A stretch of 64,000 nucleotides of DNA from Octopus bimaculoides (Eukaryota): contig NC_068999.1 of the NCBI RefSeq assembly GCF_001194135.2, positions 41,280,210-41,344,209 of the forward strand, in the 5' to 3' direction. The translations under genes and the position numbers were made by a program. Under the pieces are notes generated by a model that was not told where the DNA came from, ran no database searches, and saw nothing but the letters and a program-made list of their open reading frames with translations. Within the stretch, counting starts at the first letter, position 1; each line of letters opens with the position of its first letter. Shown piece by piece: positions 55 through 57,519 of the stretch.

Positions 55-611
55 TCATGTATATATCATATATATGTGTGTGTATGTATGAATATATTAT
101 ATATATATATGTATATTATATAGATATATATACATGCACACACACACAATTACATATGTAGATAGATAGATACATACATACATACATACATGCATGAATA
201 TACTTATTGTGTGCGTGTGTGTGCGTGTATATAGAAAAGCCCACTTATGTACATCCTCCTTCAATGTTTTACTCATTATCTCTTGATAGTAACATATTTT
301 CTCGCTGACATATAGGTATGTACACACACACACATATACACACACGTGTGTGAGAGAGGTGGGGAATTGTGTGTTACTGGGTGTCTGGCTTATATATATA
401 TATATAAGTTTGTATATTTTAAATGGATTCACGTGGATCGTTATATCCACATACATTCAGCAGCTATGAGTAAATCGGCCGCATAGGTCCCCCTCTATCC
501 CTGTCTTTATTTGCTTCACCCTCTCTATCTCCTTACTTACCTTCCCTTTCTCATTCTGTTGAAATGATTTGGGATCAATCCTGGTACAGATCATTCCTAT
601 CTCGTCAGGAA

Positions 612-691
612 TGTAGGTCGCAGAAAGCAAACTTTGCTGATGAGCTACTAATGACCAGTTCATCAGGAACGTTTGCTTTGTGTGTCCTGCA
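612..691 (+). ncRNA. Candidate pri-miRNA hairpin (predicted 5p ~626-647, 3p ~658-679)
   Basis: 35-bp stem (612-646 with 657-691) containing 28 Watson-Crick pairs, 3 G-U pairs and 4 mismatches, with a 10-nt loop. It has a basal UG at 612-613 and a CGC/GUG mismatched-GHG-type motif at 619-621/682-684. No CNNC or apical UGU was seen. It does not match any miRNA I recognise. Confidence 0.55.
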
Positions 692-954
692 GTGACAGAG
701 AGAGGTGGAAGACAGAAAAATGCACTTGAAAGGGGAACAGACAGACACATATAAAGACTATATGCATTTTCATGCTTCTTCTGAAAATTGCTGTGAACAG
801 CAATCACTCTATTGACATATTTGCTTAACAATACGATCGTTAGTGTTACACATTAATTACTAAAATCAGTGAGTTTTTGCATACAGTTCATACAAATACG
901 ACACAAATCTCAACTACAAAGAGAATCTATAGCTAAACCACGGCTTTCTATTCC

Positions 955-1125
955 TACATTTTACTTGTTTCAGTCATTTGACTGCAGCCATGCTGGAGCA
1001 CCGACTTTAGTAGAAAAAATTGACCCCAGGACTTATTCGCGGTAATCCTAGTACTGATTCTATCGGTCTCTTTTGCAGAACCGGTAAGTTACAGAGACGT
1101 GTAAACACACCATCGGTTGTCAAGC

Positions 1126-1130
<5 letters not shown>
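955..1130 (-). mobile_element. SINE family A, 3' half
   Basis: Reverse complement of the family A tail (gaccgatagaat..agtactagg..ggggtc..ggtgctccagcatggc..gactgaaacaagtaaaa); abuts (AT)n. Confidence 0.8.
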
Positions 1131-3855: not shown

Positions 3856-4898
3856 TTATATTTTGGGTTCACTAAAGGCAACAACGCAACGGAGAATGCG
3901 ATGAATAATTATGCAGTATATGGGGATTGGACAATAAGCGTAAGCTAATGACGTTGGTGATTACAAAAATTCCGAGCCGGAAACTACAGCCTAAGAGACG
4001 ACCCTCGTCCTGGAAGATCTTCAGAGCTCGACAAAGACGTCCTGCAAACTCTGTGGGAACAAAATCTCACCGTAACTGTTGAGGAACTAGCAGAGAAGCT
4101 TGGATTTGGTTAGTCAACCATTCATCGACATCTGCGTGCCATCGGAAAAGTCAGCAACTTGAGTCAATGGGTTCCTTACAAACTTTCTGAATCTAATCGC
4201 GTGCAGAGAGTGAATGTGTGCTCTTCTTTGGTGTCATATCTCACAAATGTACCATTTTTTAACTGAATCGTGACCGGTGAGGAGAAATGGGTTCTCTATA
4301 AAAATGTCAAGCGCCGAAGACCGTGTGTAGAGGCATTCCAGGCTAAAGAAGGTCTTCAGTTATGCAAAGTGTTATCTGTTTCGTGGGATATGAAAGGTTA
4401 AGTCTACTTTGAACTTTAAAACACAAACCAAACGATAACAAAGGAGATCAACTGCGAGTAGCTTGAGCGGCTTAAGTCAGCGCTAGAAGAAAAACGATAA
4501 CCTTTGGTTTCAAGACGAAAGGTGTTCTTCCATCAGGATAATGCTCGGCCGCATACAGTGAGGATGACATTTCAAAGGCTGGAGCAGTTTGAATGTGGAA
4601 CGATGCCCCACCCACCATATTCGCATCTTATCATCATTTATTCCGCAATCTTCAAAATCATTTGGACGGGTACAATATAAATTCTGTAGACGAGGTGAGA
4701 ACAGTAATGGAGGAGTATTTTTCGTCACGAACAAGTGAATTTTGGAAGAGGGGCCTTGCAAGTCTGCCAGGTATATGGAAGACTATCTTAGAAAATGAAG
4801 GAGAGTATATTTTAGATTTCAAAAACACTTTGTTTACCTTAATTCTGAAAAATAAAGAAGCATAAAAAATCCGCATTATTTATGGGATGACTCACTAT
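3856..4898 (+). mobile_element. Decayed mariner (Tc1/mariner DD34D-type) transposon, 5' end truncated
   Basis: Translated motifs KGNNATE, QKFRAGNYSL, WVPYKL, IVTGEEKWVLYKNVKRR, FHQDNARPH and YHHLFRNLQNHL, with several stops and frameshifts. A mariner-like right TIR (aaaaatccgcattatttatgggatgactcac) is followed by TA at ~4897. Confidence 0.92.
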
Positions 4899-7052: not shown

Positions 7053-7137
7053 GGGACGATTTTAGCAGTAGAACCACCGATCGAAGCTTACGACCCAGAC
7101 TACACTTTTAACGAAACAATCAAATTTTCTATTGATG
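7053..7137 (+). CDS. Cadherin-family gene, internal coding exon A (GTILAVEPPIEAYDPDYTFNETIKFSID+G), phase 0 to phase 1
   Basis: Acceptor ttttttctcttccag| and donor |gtaagt. The 85-nt exon is open and encodes the cadherin AxDxD motif (AYDPD) and a YSI-like strand (KFSI). It joins exon B in frame. Confidence 0.88.
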
Positions 7138-15600: not shown

Positions 15601-15795
15601 TTGTTTCTGGGGAGAGGCATTCACTTTCAGTGCCTTACTATTTAACACACTCACCGGTAAAATTTCCACTCATTTACTTATTTTTATTTTTCCTAAAATT
15701 TTCGTTGCGTCTGGCAACGTAAATGAGTGGAAACTTTGCCGGTGAGTGTGTTAAATAATAAGTCACTAAAAGAGAATGACTCTCCCCAGATACAA
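15601..15795. mobile_element. Fold-back / MITE-like element, ~76-bp imperfect arms
   Basis: The inner 38 bp (15639-15676 / 15720-15757) differ at 2 positions, and pairing extends outward to ~15601/15795. The spacer contains the hairpin cgttgc-gtctg-gcaacg. Confidence 0.75.
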
Positions 15796-16744
15796 CAATA
15801 TATATGTGTGTGTGTGTGATGTGTTAGTTGTCCTGCGTTGTGGTTTTTATGGTATATTTTGTGGTTTTTATGGTATATTGACAAGTGAAGTGTCTGTGTG
15901 TGAGGAGGGTCTTTGAATGTAACGCCAAAATTGTCCATGATACGTAGACGTGCTTGTGCAACAAAAAGTACTCAATTCCGTTTACTCTTGTTACCATTCG
16001 ATCCGTCTATCTCTGTTTCTCATCTTCCACCTCTCACAATCTCTATCTCAACCCTCTCTATTTCTCACCCATATGCGTTCGTACACGCGCACACAGATGC
16101 ATATGTATATGTGTACACACATTCATATACATATTGAGAGTGAATAACAAGAAAGCTAGAGAGAGGGAGAGAGAGGGAGAGACTGTGTATGTGTGTGTGT
16201 GTGTGATTATGCCAATATTTGATTAATATGCAGGTTCGTTTCATTTTTTTTCTTTTTTTTTTGGCTCCGGTACATGAGGTTCTTTGAAGAAGCCTCTTGT
16301 ATGACATCCTGTTTCTATATTGTAGCTTAAGTGCTCTTACAGCGCACACAAACTCACAAAATACAAACACACACACGTACACACGCGTATAAGTCTTGCA
16401 GTAACAAGAATATGAACATATTGAAGTACATGCAGATGTATACACACTTTCCGTCTGTGAATTATACATGTGTGTGCGCGTGCGTGTGGACTGATATATA
16501 TAATATATNNNNNNNNNNNNNNNNNNNNNNNNNNNNNNNNNNNNNNNNNNNNNNNNNNNNNNNNNNNNNNNNNNNNNNNNNNNNNNNNNNNNNNNNNNNN
16601 NNNNNNNNNNNNNNNNNNNNNNNNNNNNNNNNNNNNNNNNNNNNNNNNNNNNNNNNNNNNNNNNNNNNNNNNNNNNNNNNNNNNNNNNNNNNNNNNNNNN
16701 NNNNNNNNNNNNNNNNNNNNNNNNNNNNNNNNNNNTATATATAT

Positions 16745-18384: not shown

Positions 18385-18710
18385 AAGGCGGTGACCTGGT
18401 TCAGTCGTTAGCACGCCAGGCAAAAAGCGTAACAGCATTTCGTCCAGTTCTATATTTAAGAGAGGAGGAATTATGTACATCATTTACATTTGACGGATAT
18501 TTGTCCTCATCTTGTTTGTTGTTAACGAAGCATCTTGTTTGTTGTGTCAACAACAAACAAGATGAGGACAAATATCCGTCAAATGTAAATAATGAGCTTT
18601 TCGTCCGTCTTTACGTTCTGAGTTCAAATTCCACTGAGGAACAACTGGGGTTGACTTAATCAAATTATCTCCAAAATTGCTGGCCTGGTATCAAAATTTG
18701 AAACGAATAA
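18385..18710 (+). mobile_element. SINE family B interrupted by the 18448-18595 fold-back element
   Basis: Head aaggcggtgacctgg..cgttagcacgccaggcaaaa..atttcgtcc; resumes ttcgtccgtctttacgttctgagttcaaattcc..ttgctggcctggtatcaaaatttgaaac. Confidence 0.75.
18448..18595. mobile_element. Internally deleted copy of the same fold-back family, inserted into a SINE
   Basis: Perfect 42-bp inverted repeat (18482-18523 / 18549-18590). The extension gttctatatttaagagaggaggaattatgtacat matches the reverse complement of ~54010-54048. The ribozyme segment is absent. Confidence 0.8.
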
Positions 18711-21189: not shown

Positions 21190-21525
21190 CAGTCCCACTG
21201 CGTGGCACCTTGGCCAAGTGTCTTCTACGATAGCCTCGGGCCGACCAAAGCCTCGTGAGTAGATTTGGTAGACGGAAACTGAAAGAAGCCCGTCGTATAT
21301 ATGTATATATATATATGTGTGTGTTTGTGTGTCTGTGTTTGTCCTCCTAGCATTGCTTGACAACCGATGCTGGTGTGTTTATGTCCCCGTAACTTAGCGG
21401 TTCGGCAAAAAGAGACCGATAGAATAAGTACTAGGCTTACAAAGAATAAGTCCCGGGGTCGATTTGCTCGACTAAAGGCGGTGCTCCAGCATGGCCGCAG
21501 TCAAGTGACTGAAACAAGTAAAAGA
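21190..21525 (+). mobile_element. SINE family A, well-preserved copy (head lost in N-gap)
   Basis: Complete body, internal (TA)/(TG) tract and 3' tail ending gactgaaacaagtaaaagagt. Confidence 0.88.
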
Positions 21526-39079: not shown

Positions 39080-39290
39080 CCTTTACCGGTTTCACTGATT
39101 AGACTGCGGCCATGCCGGGGCATCGCATTGAAGAATTTTAGTCGAACGAATTGACCCCAGTATTTATGTTATTAAACCAAGTACCTATTCTATCGTTCTC
39201 TTTTTCCGAACCGCTAAGTTACGGGGACGTAAACATTCCATGACCGGTTGTTAAGCGGTGGTGGTGACAAACACGCACACAAAGACACAC
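39080..39290 (-). mobile_element. SINE family A, 3' half
   Basis: gattagactgcggccatgccggggca..gaccccagtattt..attctatcgttctcttttccgaaccgctaagttacggggacgtaaac. Confidence 0.8.
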
Positions 39291-45764: not shown

Positions 45765-46420
45765 TAATCTCAGAGAGTCAGAGACAGAAAGAGAGAGAGT
45801 ATTGTTACTGGCCAGTTATTTGTAGGAGCAACAAAGCAAAGTTCTCCATCCAGTCAAAGATAAATACCATTTGCCATACATAGGTTGGTTGAAACGCAAG
45901 CTACAATAGGTTTCATACCTATGATAATACAATGGACGGACAACCTTGTATAGCATTCCGCGTATTATCAGGCAGTCGTTCAGGCTTTTGTGTGTGTGTC
46001 TGTGTGTTTCTTTTCATAGGAGTAAAATATTTCACGGAAATGCGACAAAGGAATGCACCTAAAACAATAAGAAACACTCAAAAGGCGTTGACTCGCTTAA
46101 CCCTCAACACACAACATATATAATTTGAGTTGGGTTGAGTAACAGATGGACTCAGTTCCTCATTTTACTTGTAAATTTCCGAGGACCTGAAGAAACAACA
46201 ACTTACGCCTCGGATATTCAGAAACAATTTCTTTGCCTCAGAATATCCTAGGAGCTGGTTGTCTTTTGTTCACATCCGAGAAACTTAAAGTAACATGAGG
46301 ATCTATGGTCAACTTATATGAGTGTGTATGTGTGTTTTAAGATTTCTTTTTTCCCTAACAAGGATGCAAAGAATACAATTATAATCCGAATGAGAAGAGA
46401 AAAAAATATTTTAACACATA

Positions 46421-52529: not shown

Positions 52530-52880
52530 AAGCTTGTGGTAAGAAGCTTGCTTCCCAAACACTTGGTTCTGAGTTTCGTGTCACCTTCAGCAAGTGTCTT
52601 CTACTATAGCCTCGGGCCAACCAAAGCCTTGTGAGTGGATTTGGAAGACGGAAACTGAAAGAATATACATATGTTACTTGTGTCTGAGTCTGTTCCTCTA
52701 CCGTCACTTGACAACCAATGTTGGTCTCTTTACGTCCCCGTCACTAAGCTGTTCGGCAAAAAGAGACCAATAGAATTAGTACTAGGCTTACAAAGAATAA
52801 GTCCTGCGTTTGATTTGTTCCACTAAAGGCGGTGCTCCAGCGTGGCCGCAGTAGAATTACTTAAACAAGTAAAAGAATGC
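52530..52880 (+). mobile_element. SINE family A, full length
   Basis: gtggtaagaagcttgcttcccaaacac through ggcggtgctccagcgtggccgcagt..aaacaagtaaaaga. Confidence 0.88.
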
Positions 52881-53185: not shown

Positions 53186-53689
53186 TTTTCAATCTTCTTT
53201 CTTTTTTTTTTTTTTTGTCGTTGACTCTGTTTGCTGATAGTATTGTTCTTGTCGTCGTTGCTGTTGCTATTGTTTCCATGGAAATTACATCAAACCCAGC
53301 TGTATTGCCAATTTCTTCGTGTGCTGAATAATCTGAAAATCTTTTAGTTTATTTTTTCGTTTTATAATAGAATTGAGAATCTTCAAGTTCTGAAAACTTA
53401 AAACCAAGACAAATCAATTCCAAGATTTCAAACACAGGGCGTTTCTAACCTTAGGGTTTGCCTCCCTTGACAACGCCTAAGTTTACTTGATTTTGTATTT
53501 TAGCTTTTATCATGTTTGTGTTTTTTGTTAGCTAAAAGCAAAAATTGTGTTTACATCTCTTGTATACGCGCGCACGTGCGCGGTTTACTCCATAATACTT
53601 ATTTACAATTTAAATGCCGAGTACAAATATTCTATACGAAACTACTGGTTTATTGGTTGCAGATTTCTAGAAGGTCTAAACCTTATTTA

Positions 53690-53829
53690 CATTATTTATA
53701 TTTGACGGATATTTGTCCTCATCTTGTTAGTTGTTAAGACAACGTTTCGGCTGATATACCCTCCGGCCTTCATCAGGTGTTTTGGGGGAAATTTCGAACC
53801 TGGGTTCTCATTCCTAAGGTATTTCTCAA

Positions 53830-53865
<36 letters not shown>

Positions 53866-54045
53866 ATTGAAAAATCTCTTAGAAATGAGAACCCAGGTTC
53901 GAAATTTCCCCCAAAACACCTGATGAAGGCTGGAGTGTATATCAGCCGAAACGTTGTGTTAACAACAAACAAGATGAGGACAAATATCCGTCAAATGTAA
54001 ATAATTTAAATAATGTACATGATTCCTCATCACTTAAATATAGAG
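53690..54045. mobile_element. Fold-back element: ~140-bp inverted arms around a (TAT)n spacer, each arm carrying a hammerhead motif; probable Penelope-like terminal-repeat derivative
   Basis: The left arm tttgacggatatttgtcctc...ctcaatgt is the reverse complement of the right arm acattgaaaa...atatccgtcaaa, with scattered mismatches. A related copy lies at 18450-18595. Confidence 0.75.
53915..53960 (+). ncRNA. Minimal type I hammerhead ribozyme motif (Penelope-like-element type)
   Basis: Stem I AACAC(53915-19)/GUGUU(53956-60). Core CUGAUGA (53920-26) plus an extra A. Stem II GGCUG/CAGCC with a 10-nt loop. GAAA (53948-51), then palindromic ACGU stem III and the predicted cleavage triplet GUU (after 53955). 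Confidence 0.65.
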
Positions 54046-57348: not shown

Positions 57349-57519
57349 GGTGTTCAAGCAAATAACGAAGAAAGGTTCTGTATTGCTCTCCTACAAGTTG
57401 ATGTTCTTGCCCAAAACGATACGTCTTTGATATTTTCAAAATCCTTCTATGAAGCAGCTGTGGTTGAAAATGCCCCCGTTGGAACAAATATTCTTACTTT
57501 ACCTGTCATATACAAAGCC
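57349..57519 (+). CDS. Cadherin-family gene, internal coding exon C (GVQANNEERFCIALLQVDVLAQNDTSLIFSKSFYEAAVVENAPVGTNILTLPVIYKA), phase 0 to phase 0
   Basis: Acceptor ttgtgtttctaatttcag| and donor |gtaagt. The 171-nt exon is open and encodes the end of one EC repeat plus the hallmark start of the next (F-x4-Y-x-A-x-V-x-E-N-A-P-V-G-T). Confidence 0.92.

What the first reader, a model, noticed from the sequence alone, without database searches (positions are those of the whole stretch)
612..691. Unrecognised pri-miRNA-like hairpin, sense to and probably intronic in the cadherin gene
Seen: 612-646 pairs with 657-691 over 35 bp with a 10-nt loop. All three transition-type imperfections are G-U on the + strand (614/689, 620/683, 644/659) and none are A-C, which favours a + strand RNA structure. 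Established: Microprocessor substrates have ~35-bp stems, a basal UG about 14 nt before the 5p cut and a mismatched GHG at -7 to -5. Here UG is at 612-613 and CGC/GUG at 619-621/682-684, and both place the 5p start at ~626. Inference: the products would be about AGCAAACUUUGCUGAUGAGCUA (5p) and GUUCAUCAGGAACGUUUGCUUU (3p), with a 2-nt 3' overhang. I do not recognise either as a conserved family, and coleoids are known to have many lineage-specific miRNAs. CNNC and apical UGU are absent.
Basis: partly seen in the sequence, partly recalled or inferred. Interest (0 to 1): 0.75.

Follow-up and report, generated by a model that had tools for sequence, protein, structure and literature searches.

The report
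Unverified miRNA-like hairpin in octopus intron
A real 80-base hairpin with textbook microRNA-precursor geometry sits in non-coding DNA 6.4 kb upstream of the first visible exon of an octopus cadherin gene, but similar inverted repeats are common in this window, it matches no known microRNA, and nothing available here shows that it makes a small RNA.

Summary
Bases 612-646 and 657-691 form a 35-position stem (28 Watson-Crick pairs, 3 G-U, 4 mismatches) with a 10-nt loop. It folds far better than shuffles and 16 kcal/mol better on the + strand. It is single-copy in the window and too good to be chance.

The microRNA reading could not be tested. No cephalopod DNA or small-RNA data is reachable with these tools. 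What could be tested lowers it:
- No Rfam family matches.
- None of the predicted seeds appears in the held part of the published target tables for octopus miRNAs.
- The 56.8 kb of sequenced bases hold about five comparably strong non-repetitive hairpins, two from one foldback repeat family.
- The helix continues below 612, so the "basal junction" is an internal loop.

Sense orientation to a cadherin-superfamily gene is confirmed. An intronic position is likely but not shown.

My best reading is an incidental intronic inverted repeat (about 0.7). A young, unannotated miRNA is about 0.1. The hairpin also has mirtron-like ends, but no flanking exons are visible.

The parts
612..646 (+). 5' arm of the hairpin
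   Evidence: Pairs with 691-657: 28 WC, 3 GU, 4 mismatches; RNAfold.
647..656 (+). Terminal loop ACUAAUGACC (10 nt). With U646 it reads UACUAAU, which resembles a branch site.
   Evidence: The branch-site resemblance is my own reading of the sequence.
657..691 (+). 3' arm of the hairpin
596..607 (+). 5' half of a weaker basal extension of the helix. It is separated from the main stem by internal loop 608-611.
   Evidence: MFE and centroid structures of 592-711 and 532-771.
693..705 (+). 3' half of the basal extension
626..647 (+). Hypothetical 5p product AGCAAACUUUGCUGAUGAGCUA. This is geometry only; there are no reads.
   Evidence: It lies 14 nt from U612 and 21-22 bp from the loop. Unique in the window at up to 3 mismatches.
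658..679 (+). Hypothetical 3p product GUUCAUCAGGAACGUUUGCUUU. This is geometry only.
   Evidence: 2-nt overhang geometry. The only other match in the window is the opposite arm.
7053..7137 (+). Nearest downstream exon-like segment of the cadherin-superfamily host gene: acceptor ...ttccag|GG, donor G|gtaagt.
   Evidence: weak Pfam Cadherin match, E = 0.07.
57349..57519 (+). Cadherin-repeat junction exon, identical to residues 5-62 of the O. bimaculoides protein A0A0L8GSF1 (P0001).

Best explanation
This is an incidental inverted repeat in non-coding, probably intronic, DNA of a large cadherin-superfamily gene of Octopus bimaculoides.

It most likely arose in one step, either as a small foldback or MITE-type insertion or by a template-switch inverted duplication, and has since picked up about 20% imperfect positions. 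When the host pre-mRNA is transcribed, the + strand folds into a 35-position stem (about 47 positions with the basal extension).

Such a duplex is a plausible passive substrate for dsRNA enzymes, with ADAR editing the most likely in a coleoid and occasional Drosha cleavage possible. It has no dedicated, selected small-RNA product.

Shown: the structure, its strand bias, its non-randomness, single copy in the window, sense orientation to the gene, and no match to known miRNAs. Inferred: the origin, transcription through the site, and the lack of function.
For: 1. Strong non-repetitive hairpins are common here. Besides 612-691, the 56,839 sequenced bases hold four more:
- 18478-18594 (-72.6 kcal/mol);
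- the 337-nt palindrome 53680-54016, which shares about 55-nt termini at 93-98% identity with the 18478-18594 hairpin, so these two belong to a repeat family;
- the 191-nt palindrome 15610-15800;
- the imperfect hairpin 46178-46282.
That is about one per 11 kb, against 162 annotated miRNA genes in the whole O. bimaculoides genome (PMC9699675).

2. The same interval holds other mobile-element debris: a mariner transposase relic at about 3961-4862 and at least 8 SINE-like copies.

3. No Rfam family reaches its threshold. The best is mir-2235 at 25.2 bits against a gathering score of 61.

4. None of the 8-mer target sites predicted for a 5p starting at 625-627 or a 3p starting at 657-660 appears in Data S3 of the octopus miRNA study, where annotated miRNAs occur 38-75 times each. 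GTTTGCTA is explicitly labelled a non-seed k-mer in Data S2. That study included O. bimaculoides whole-body small-RNA data.

5. Only 2 of the 4 Microprocessor sequence motifs are present (motif list from PMC6298569).

6. The helix runs on below the supposed basal junction.

7. The octopus miRNA study itself describes hairpins in octopus introns and 3'UTRs as ADAR substrates.

8. One-step origins for such hairpins are documented: Made1 MITEs (PMC1784062) and template switching (PMC10710096).
Against: - The geometry is close to the Microprocessor optimum: 35 positions, a 10-nt loop, UG at -14 and a C-G / G-U / C-G motif at -7 to -5.
- All three transition-type imperfections are G-U on the strand that is sense to the gene, worth 16 kcal/mol.
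- The element is single-copy in the window, shows no target-site duplication and has no similarity to the mariner relic's ends. A transposon origin is therefore not demonstrated.
- The published annotation required presence in two octopus species, so it would miss a species-specific miRNA.
- The supplementary tables I searched were truncated when stored.
Confidence: 0.7

Rival explanations
1. A genuine canonical intronic miRNA gene that is evolutionarily young or simply unannotated. It would be transcribed within the cadherin pre-mRNA, cut by Drosha at about 625/626 and 679/680, then cut by Dicer next to the loop. The 5p (AGCAAACUUUGCUGAUGAGCUA) is the likelier guide because it has a 5' A and the weaker 5' end pair.
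For: - 35-position stem with a 10-nt loop; 80-mer at -43.5 kcal/mol, MFEI 1.21, ensemble diversity 1.6.
- UG at 612-613 and the wobble GHG-like motif agree on one cut site.
- G-U bias towards the sense strand.
- Single copy in 64 kb.
- Coleoids gained about 90 novel miRNA families, and the authors say species-specific ones were missed.
Against: - A base rate of roughly one comparable hairpin per 11-28 kb in this window against about 160 known genes genome-wide gives a prior well under 1%.
- No CNNC and no apical UGU.
- The seeds are absent from the published target tables. The nearest is Ovu-Novel-38-v1 (nt 2-8 UCAUCAU against UCAUCAG here), which shares only a 6-mer.
- No Rfam hit.
- The helix continues below the junction.
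- The motif rules come from vertebrate work.
Confidence: 0.1
2. A decayed miniature inverted-repeat or foldback transposon copy, built like the 80-bp Made1 elements that gave rise to human mir-548. Any small RNAs would be siRNA/piRNA-like or absent.
For: - The 80-nt arm-loop-arm layout matches the Made1 design (PMC1784062).
- A foldback family and a mariner relic lie in the same window.
- The inverted repeat is far beyond chance.
Against: - No second copy in the window, even at word size 7.
- No TA or other target-site duplication at either candidate boundary.
- No similarity to the ends of the mariner relic.
- At 80% Watson-Crick pairing it would have to be an old copy.
Confidence: 0.15
3. 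A mirtron-type short intron (613-692). Splicing rather than Drosha would define the hairpin ends, and Dicer would then produce 613-634 and 671-692.
For: All read directly:
- GUAGGU at 613-618.
- UACUAAU in the loop, 41 nt upstream of the 3' end.
- A pyrimidine-rich tract followed by CAG ending at 692.
- G613 pairs with C690, leaving A691-G692 as a 2-nt 3' overhang.
Against: - There is no sign of flanking exons. TGA sits at 693-695, and the flanks have low-complexity translations with no cadherin-like sequence.
- The donor context AAU|GUAGGU is weak compared with the GTAAGT donors of the two real exons.
- The helix extends beyond the would-be splice sites.
- At 80 nt it is long for a mirtron.
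- The pyrimidine tract is partly forced by pairing with a purine-rich 5' arm.
Confidence: 0.02
4. A chance hairpin with no generating process.
For: None beyond the large size of the genome.
Against: - 0 of 200 shuffles fold as well.
- 0 of 15 block-shuffled windows contain a stem with at least 31 of 35 pairs.
Confidence: 0.01

Closest known systems
Novel coleoid/octopus miRNA genes (Ovu-/Obi-Novel families, MirGeneDB; Zolotarov et al. 2022, PMC9699675)
   Same: - Single hairpin of pre-miRNA size in a coleoid genome.
- Near-ideal stem length and loop size.
- Located in a gene of a neural-type family.
   Different: - No read support.
- The seed is not among those in the published target tables.
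- Conservation is unknown.
- Those families had to be present in two octopus species.
Made1 MITE hairpins / hsa-mir-548 (PMC1784062)
   Same: An 80-nt near-palindrome made of two ~35-nt arms around a short spacer. It lies in a region that also carries a mariner relic.
   Different: - No TA target-site duplication.
- No other copy in the window.
- No similarity to the local mariner ends.
Hairpins created by template-switch mutations (PMC10710096)
   Same: A local, single-copy inverted repeat in an intron that could have arisen in one event.
   Different: Showing this needs an outgroup sequence that lacks the inverted copy. None is available here.
Mirtrons (Drosophila, C. elegans, mammals; from my own knowledge)
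   Same: GU...AG termini, a branch-site-like loop, a pyrimidine tract and a 2-nt AG overhang.
   Different: No flanking exons are evident. It is longer than typical mirtrons, and the stem continues outside the putative intron.
Intronic ADAR substrate hairpins of coleoids (PMC9699675)
   Same: A long imperfect intramolecular duplex in an intron of a neural-type gene.
   Different: Editing was not measured here. This describes a consequence of the structure, not a selected function.

Membership tests
Canonical animal miRNA gene (MirGeneDB-type criteria) | Imperfect hairpin with at least 16 nt of complementarity between the arms and a loop of at least 8 nt | tested here: met
   31 of 35 positions paired, 10-nt loop.
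Canonical animal miRNA gene (MirGeneDB-type criteria) | Reads of 20-26 nt from both arms | not testable with these tools
   No small-RNA data is accessible.
Canonical animal miRNA gene (MirGeneDB-type criteria) | Homogeneous 5' ends and 2-nt 3' offsets between the arms (Drosha/Dicer signature) | not testable with these tools
   The geometry allows 626-647 / 658-679 with 2-nt overhangs, but there are no reads.
Canonical animal miRNA gene (MirGeneDB-type criteria) | Orthologous hairpin in related species with arms more conserved than loop | not testable with these tools
   Protein-based contig look-ups found nothing. The protein search returned only the O. bimaculoides fragment. The metagenome and prokaryote scans gave only chance 20-mer hits.
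Canonical animal miRNA gene (MirGeneDB-type criteria) | Not a multi-copy repeat | tested here: inconclusive
   Single copy in this 64-kb window. Genome-wide copy number is unknown.
Optimal Microprocessor substrate (Auyeung 2013; Fang & Bartel 2015, as summarised in PMC6298569) | ~35-bp stem | tested here: met
   35 positions from 612 to the loop. However, the helix continues below an internal loop.
Optimal Microprocessor substrate (Auyeung 2013; Fang & Bartel 2015, as summarised in PMC6298569) | Basal UG and mismatched GHG | tested here: met
   U612-G613; C619-G684, G620-U683, C621-G682. The central pair is a wobble, not a full mismatch.
Optimal Microprocessor substrate (Auyeung 2013; Fang & Bartel 2015, as summarised in PMC6298569) | Downstream CNNC and apical UGU(G) | tested here: not met
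   692-715 has no CNNC in register, and 644-656 has no UGU or GUG.
Any described miRNA family | Sequence/structure match to a curated model, or a seed shared with an annotated octopus miRNA | tested here: not met
   - Rfam best hit is mir-2235, 25.2 bits against a gathering score of 61.
- The predicted seeds are absent from PMC9699675 Data S2/S3, which were truncated in storage.
- No paper text contains either arm.
MITE / foldback transposon | Multiple dispersed copies | tested here: inconclusive
   No other copy in the window. The whole genome is not searchable here.
MITE / foldback transposon | Target-site duplication flanking the terminal inverted repeats | tested here: not met
   No direct repeat or TA at the 612/691 or 596/705 boundaries.
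Mirtron | The hairpin is a complete spliced intron between two exons | tested here: inconclusive
   Splice-like signals are present at 613, 646-652 and 672-692. The flanks show no exon-like coding sequence, and no RNA-seq is available.
Intron of the cadherin-superfamily gene (host context) | Exons of the same gene on both sides, on the same strand | tested here: inconclusive
   Downstream + strand exons at 7053-7137 and 57349-57519 are confirmed as cadherin-type. No exon lies upstream of 612 within the window.

The most novel reading that the evidence does not exclude
The hairpin is an unannotated miRNA gene specific to O. bimaculoides or to octopods. It would be hosted in sense orientation in an intron of a cadherin-superfamily (CELSR/protocadherin-like) gene, and would have been born recently from a single inverted-duplication event. 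It would be a snapshot of how the coleoid miRNA expansion recruits new genes in neural adhesion loci.
Probability: 0.1. Interest if true: 0.4.

Novelty: new member of a known kind. Interest (0 to 1): 0.2.

Why it matters
If the hairpin proved to be a processed miRNA, it would add one lineage-specific gene to the roughly 90 novel coleoid and octopus miRNA families already described. It might also illustrate birth from an inverted duplication inside a neural adhesion gene. That would be useful but incremental. If it is an incidental inverted repeat, as I think most likely, it is ordinary. The practical lesson is that structure-only calls of miRNA-like hairpins in this repeat-rich genome have a very high false-positive rate, and read evidence is needed.

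Tried and rejected
1. Rfam scan of 400-900 at a permissive E-value gave only sub-threshold generic hairpin matches.

2. A full-text search of 8.3 million papers for either arm, in U and T forms, gave 0 hits.

3. Supplements of Zolotarov et al. 2022: the miRNA annotation file (Data S1) is not held. Neither arm sequence occurs in the held files. Seed-site look-ups in Data S2 and S3 found no match. The 8-mer convention, RC(nt 2-8)+A, was verified with Mir-190 and Mir-33. Ovu-Novel-38-v1 shares only a 6-mer, which I judged to be coincidence.

4. I tried to reach orthologous DNA through spurious ORFs that span the hairpin and through the real exon protein. Four exact look-ups found nothing. The homology search returned only the 82-aa O. 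bimaculoides fragment.

5. Scans of metagenome and GTDB contigs with a degenerate 20-mer that matches both arms gave 9 and 12 hits. The metagenome loci were checked and none has a second arm nearby. The GTDB hits are single matches in bacterial contigs. I treat all of them as chance.

6. Mariner-MITE origin: the hairpin arms were aligned to the ends of the mariner relic in the same interval, and no meaningful similarity was found.

7. Pfam did not confirm either the cadherin exons (E = 0.07, below cut-off) or the mariner relic. PDB phmmer confirmed both.

8. Chance origin was rejected by shuffles.

Full report
**What is there.**
The window is a gap-rich, microsatellite-rich draft sequence (7,161 N in 19 gaps). 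An exon at 57349-57519 is identical to residues 5-62 of the Octopus bimaculoides protein A0A0L8GSF1, so the source is O. bimaculoides.

At the reported coordinates the + strand reads UGUAGGUCGCAGAAAGCAAACUUUGCUGAUGAGCU-ACUAAUGACC-AGUUCAUCAGGAACGUUUGCUUUGUGUGUCCUGCA. Position-by-position pairing of 612-646 with 691-657 gives:
- 28 Watson-Crick pairs;
- 3 G-U wobbles (614/689, 620/683, 644/659);
- 4 mismatches (618/685 U-U, 623/680 G-G, 633/670 U-C, 636/667 G-G);
- a 10-nt loop.

**Is it more than chance?**
RNAfold of 592-711 gives -55.2 kcal/mol on the + strand (z = -7.0; none of 200 dinucleotide shuffles as good) and -39.5 on the - strand (z = -4.1). The 80-mer alone gives -43.5 on + and -27.4 on -. 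The hairpin persists unchanged in a 240-nt context.

In 15 block-shuffled versions of the window, ungapped stems with at least 30 of 35 pairs appeared 0.2 times per window, and none reached 31 of 35. The hairpin is real and was produced by some process, not by chance.

All of the following check out directly against the sequence:
- UG at 612-613.
- C619-G684 / G620-U683 / C621-G682, a GHG-like motif whose centre is a wobble.
- No CNNC 16-18 nt downstream of the putative 3p end.
- No UGU or GUG at the apical junction.
- 5p 626-647 and 3p 658-679 with 2-nt 3' overhangs.
- No A-C mismatches on the + strand.

The determinant list itself (a ~35-bp stem, mismatched GHG, basal UG, apical UGUG, CNNC) is as summarised in PMC6298569.

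Two qualifications apply:
- The helix continues below 612. Bases 600-607 pair with 693-701 and 596-598 with 703-705, across a 4x1 internal loop. The "basal junction" is therefore not a clean single-strand/double-strand boundary.
- Three G-U and zero A-C is only a 1-in-8 outcome under neutral decay of a perfect inverted repeat.

**Context.**
Two + strand exon-like segments with good splice sites lie downstream: 7053-7137 and 57349-57519. Pfam is below its cut-off on these short pieces (E = 0.07). A PDB sequence search is decisive: CELSR1 8vy2_A at E = 3.4e-20, followed by protocadherins and cadherin-23, all aligned on the repeat-junction motif.

The gene is therefore a cadherin-superfamily member and the hairpin is sense to it. 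Exon A begins in the middle of a cadherin repeat, so upstream exons must exist and an intronic position for 612-691 is likely. No exon upstream of 612 is visible in the window, and the only deposited model found is an 82-aa fragment that starts at about 57.3 kb.

**Known miRNA?**
- No Rfam family reaches its gathering score. The best is mir-2235, 25.2 bits against 61.
- Neither arm occurs in any searchable paper text.
- The octopus miRNA study (PMC9699675) annotated 162 miRNA genes in O. bimaculoides from small-RNA data and required each novel family to be present in two octopus species. Its annotation file is not held.
- Its target-site tables are held, in truncated form. I confirmed that they list 8-mers as RC(nt 2-8)+A, using Mir-190 and Mir-33.
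- None of the sites expected for a 5p starting at 625-627 or a 3p starting at 657-660 occurs in Data S3, where annotated miRNAs appear 38-75 times each. GTTTGCTA is labelled a non-seed k-mer in Data S2.
- The nearest entry, Ovu-Novel-38-v1 (nt 2-8 UCAUCAU), shares only a 6-mer with the 3p read from 659 (UCAUCAG). With about 160 genes and several registers tried, that is expected by chance.

**Base rate.**
A sliding RNAfold scan of the window (10,972 100-nt windows, both strands) ranks this hairpin second among non-low-complexity sequences. It has company:
- 18478-18594, a near-perfect foldback at -72.6 kcal/mol.
- The 337-nt palindrome 53680-54016, whose termini are 93-98% identical to that foldback, so the two belong to a repeat family.
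- The 191-nt palindrome 15610-15800.
- The imperfect, quite miRNA-like hairpin 46178-46282.

That makes about five strong complex hairpins in 56.8 kb. Extrapolating from one window to a genome of about 2.7 Gb (genome size from my own knowledge) is rough. Even so, it implies tens of thousands to a couple of hundred thousand such hairpins against about 160 annotated miRNA genes.

Generous likelihood ratios for the UG and GHG motifs and the strand bias are partly offset by the missing CNNC and UGU and by absence from the published set. They leave the probability of a genuine miRNA near 5-10%.

**Origin.**
The same interval carries a frameshifted mariner transposase relic at about 3961-4862 (Mos1 3hos_A, E = 2e-22) and at least 8 SINE-like copies. 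Mariner-derived 80-bp MITEs are the source of human mir-548 (PMC1784062), and this hairpin is also 80 nt.

However, I found no second copy in the window even at word size 7, no target-site duplication and no similarity to the relic's ends. A template-switch inverted duplication (PMC10710096) is an equally good one-step origin. The tools here cannot separate the two.

**An unplanned observation.**
The hairpin also carries mirtron-like termini:
- GUAGGU at 613-618.
- UACUAAU in the loop, 41 nt from the 3' end.
- A pyrimidine-rich tract and CAG ending at 692.
- G613 pairs with C690, so A691-G692 would form a 2-nt overhang.

Against this reading, there is no exon-like sequence on either side and TGA sits at 693-695. 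The donor context is weak next to the GTAAGT donors of the real exons. The helix also extends past both putative splice sites. I give it about 2%.

**What could not be done.**
Look-ups of exact ORFs and of the exon protein found no contigs. The protein search returned only the source species' fragment. The metagenome and prokaryote scans gave only chance 20-mer hits.

**Verdict.**
The inference that it is a miRNA is untested and unlikely a priori.

My ranking:
- Most likely an ordinary intronic inverted repeat that folds in the pre-mRNA and may be edited by ADAR, as hairpins in octopus introns are reported to be.
- About 0.1 that it is a young, unannotated miRNA.
- About 0.02 that it is a mirtron.

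Interest is low to modest. Either way it belongs to a known kind of feature.

Noticed in passing
window 18478-18594 and 53680-54016: A near-perfect ~50-bp foldback hairpin (-72.6 kcal/mol) shares ~55-nt termini at 93-98% identity with both ends of a 337-nt, 90% self-complementary palindrome. This is a foldback/MITE-like repeat family with at least two members in the window.
   Followed up: partly
window 15610-15800: A 191-nt palindrome, 76% self-complementary, folding at about -96 to -102 kcal/mol on either strand. It is single-copy in the window.
   Followed up: partly
window 46178-46282: A second imperfect, miRNA-like hairpin: about 37 bp with 1-nt internal loops and a 5-nt terminal loop. 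It is more stable on the - strand, antisense to the cadherin gene (-42.1 against -34.3 kcal/mol), and single-copy in the window.
   Followed up: partly
window ~3961-4862 (+): A frameshifted, degenerate mariner-type transposase relic. Its best PDB matches are Mos1 transposase 3hos_A (E = 2e-22) and the SETMAR transposase domain. Pfam did not report it, and no terminal inverted repeats were found.
   Followed up: yes
window 959-1127 and at least 8 further sites (e.g. 21355-21523, 52704-52874, 39082-39257): A SINE-like dispersed repeat, 73-86% identical between copies and present on both strands.
   Followed up: partly
window 613-692: The hairpin's ends coincide with splice-like signals: GUAGGU donor-like at 613, UACUAAU branch-like in the loop, and a pyrimidine tract plus CAG ending at 692, with a 2-nt AG overhang. 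This is mirtron geometry without visible flanking exons.
   Followed up: partly
window 7053-7137 and 57349-57519 (+): Two small cadherin-repeat exons lie about 50 kb apart. The deposited protein A0A0L8GSF1 (82 aa) covers only the second, so the public gene model for this large cadherin-superfamily gene (best PDB match CELSR1) is fragmentary.
   Followed up: partly
whole window: There are 19 assembly gaps (7,161 N), most of them flanked by (AT)n, (TG)n or (CT)n microsatellites. These simple repeats dominate naive hairpin and ORF lists.
   Followed up: no
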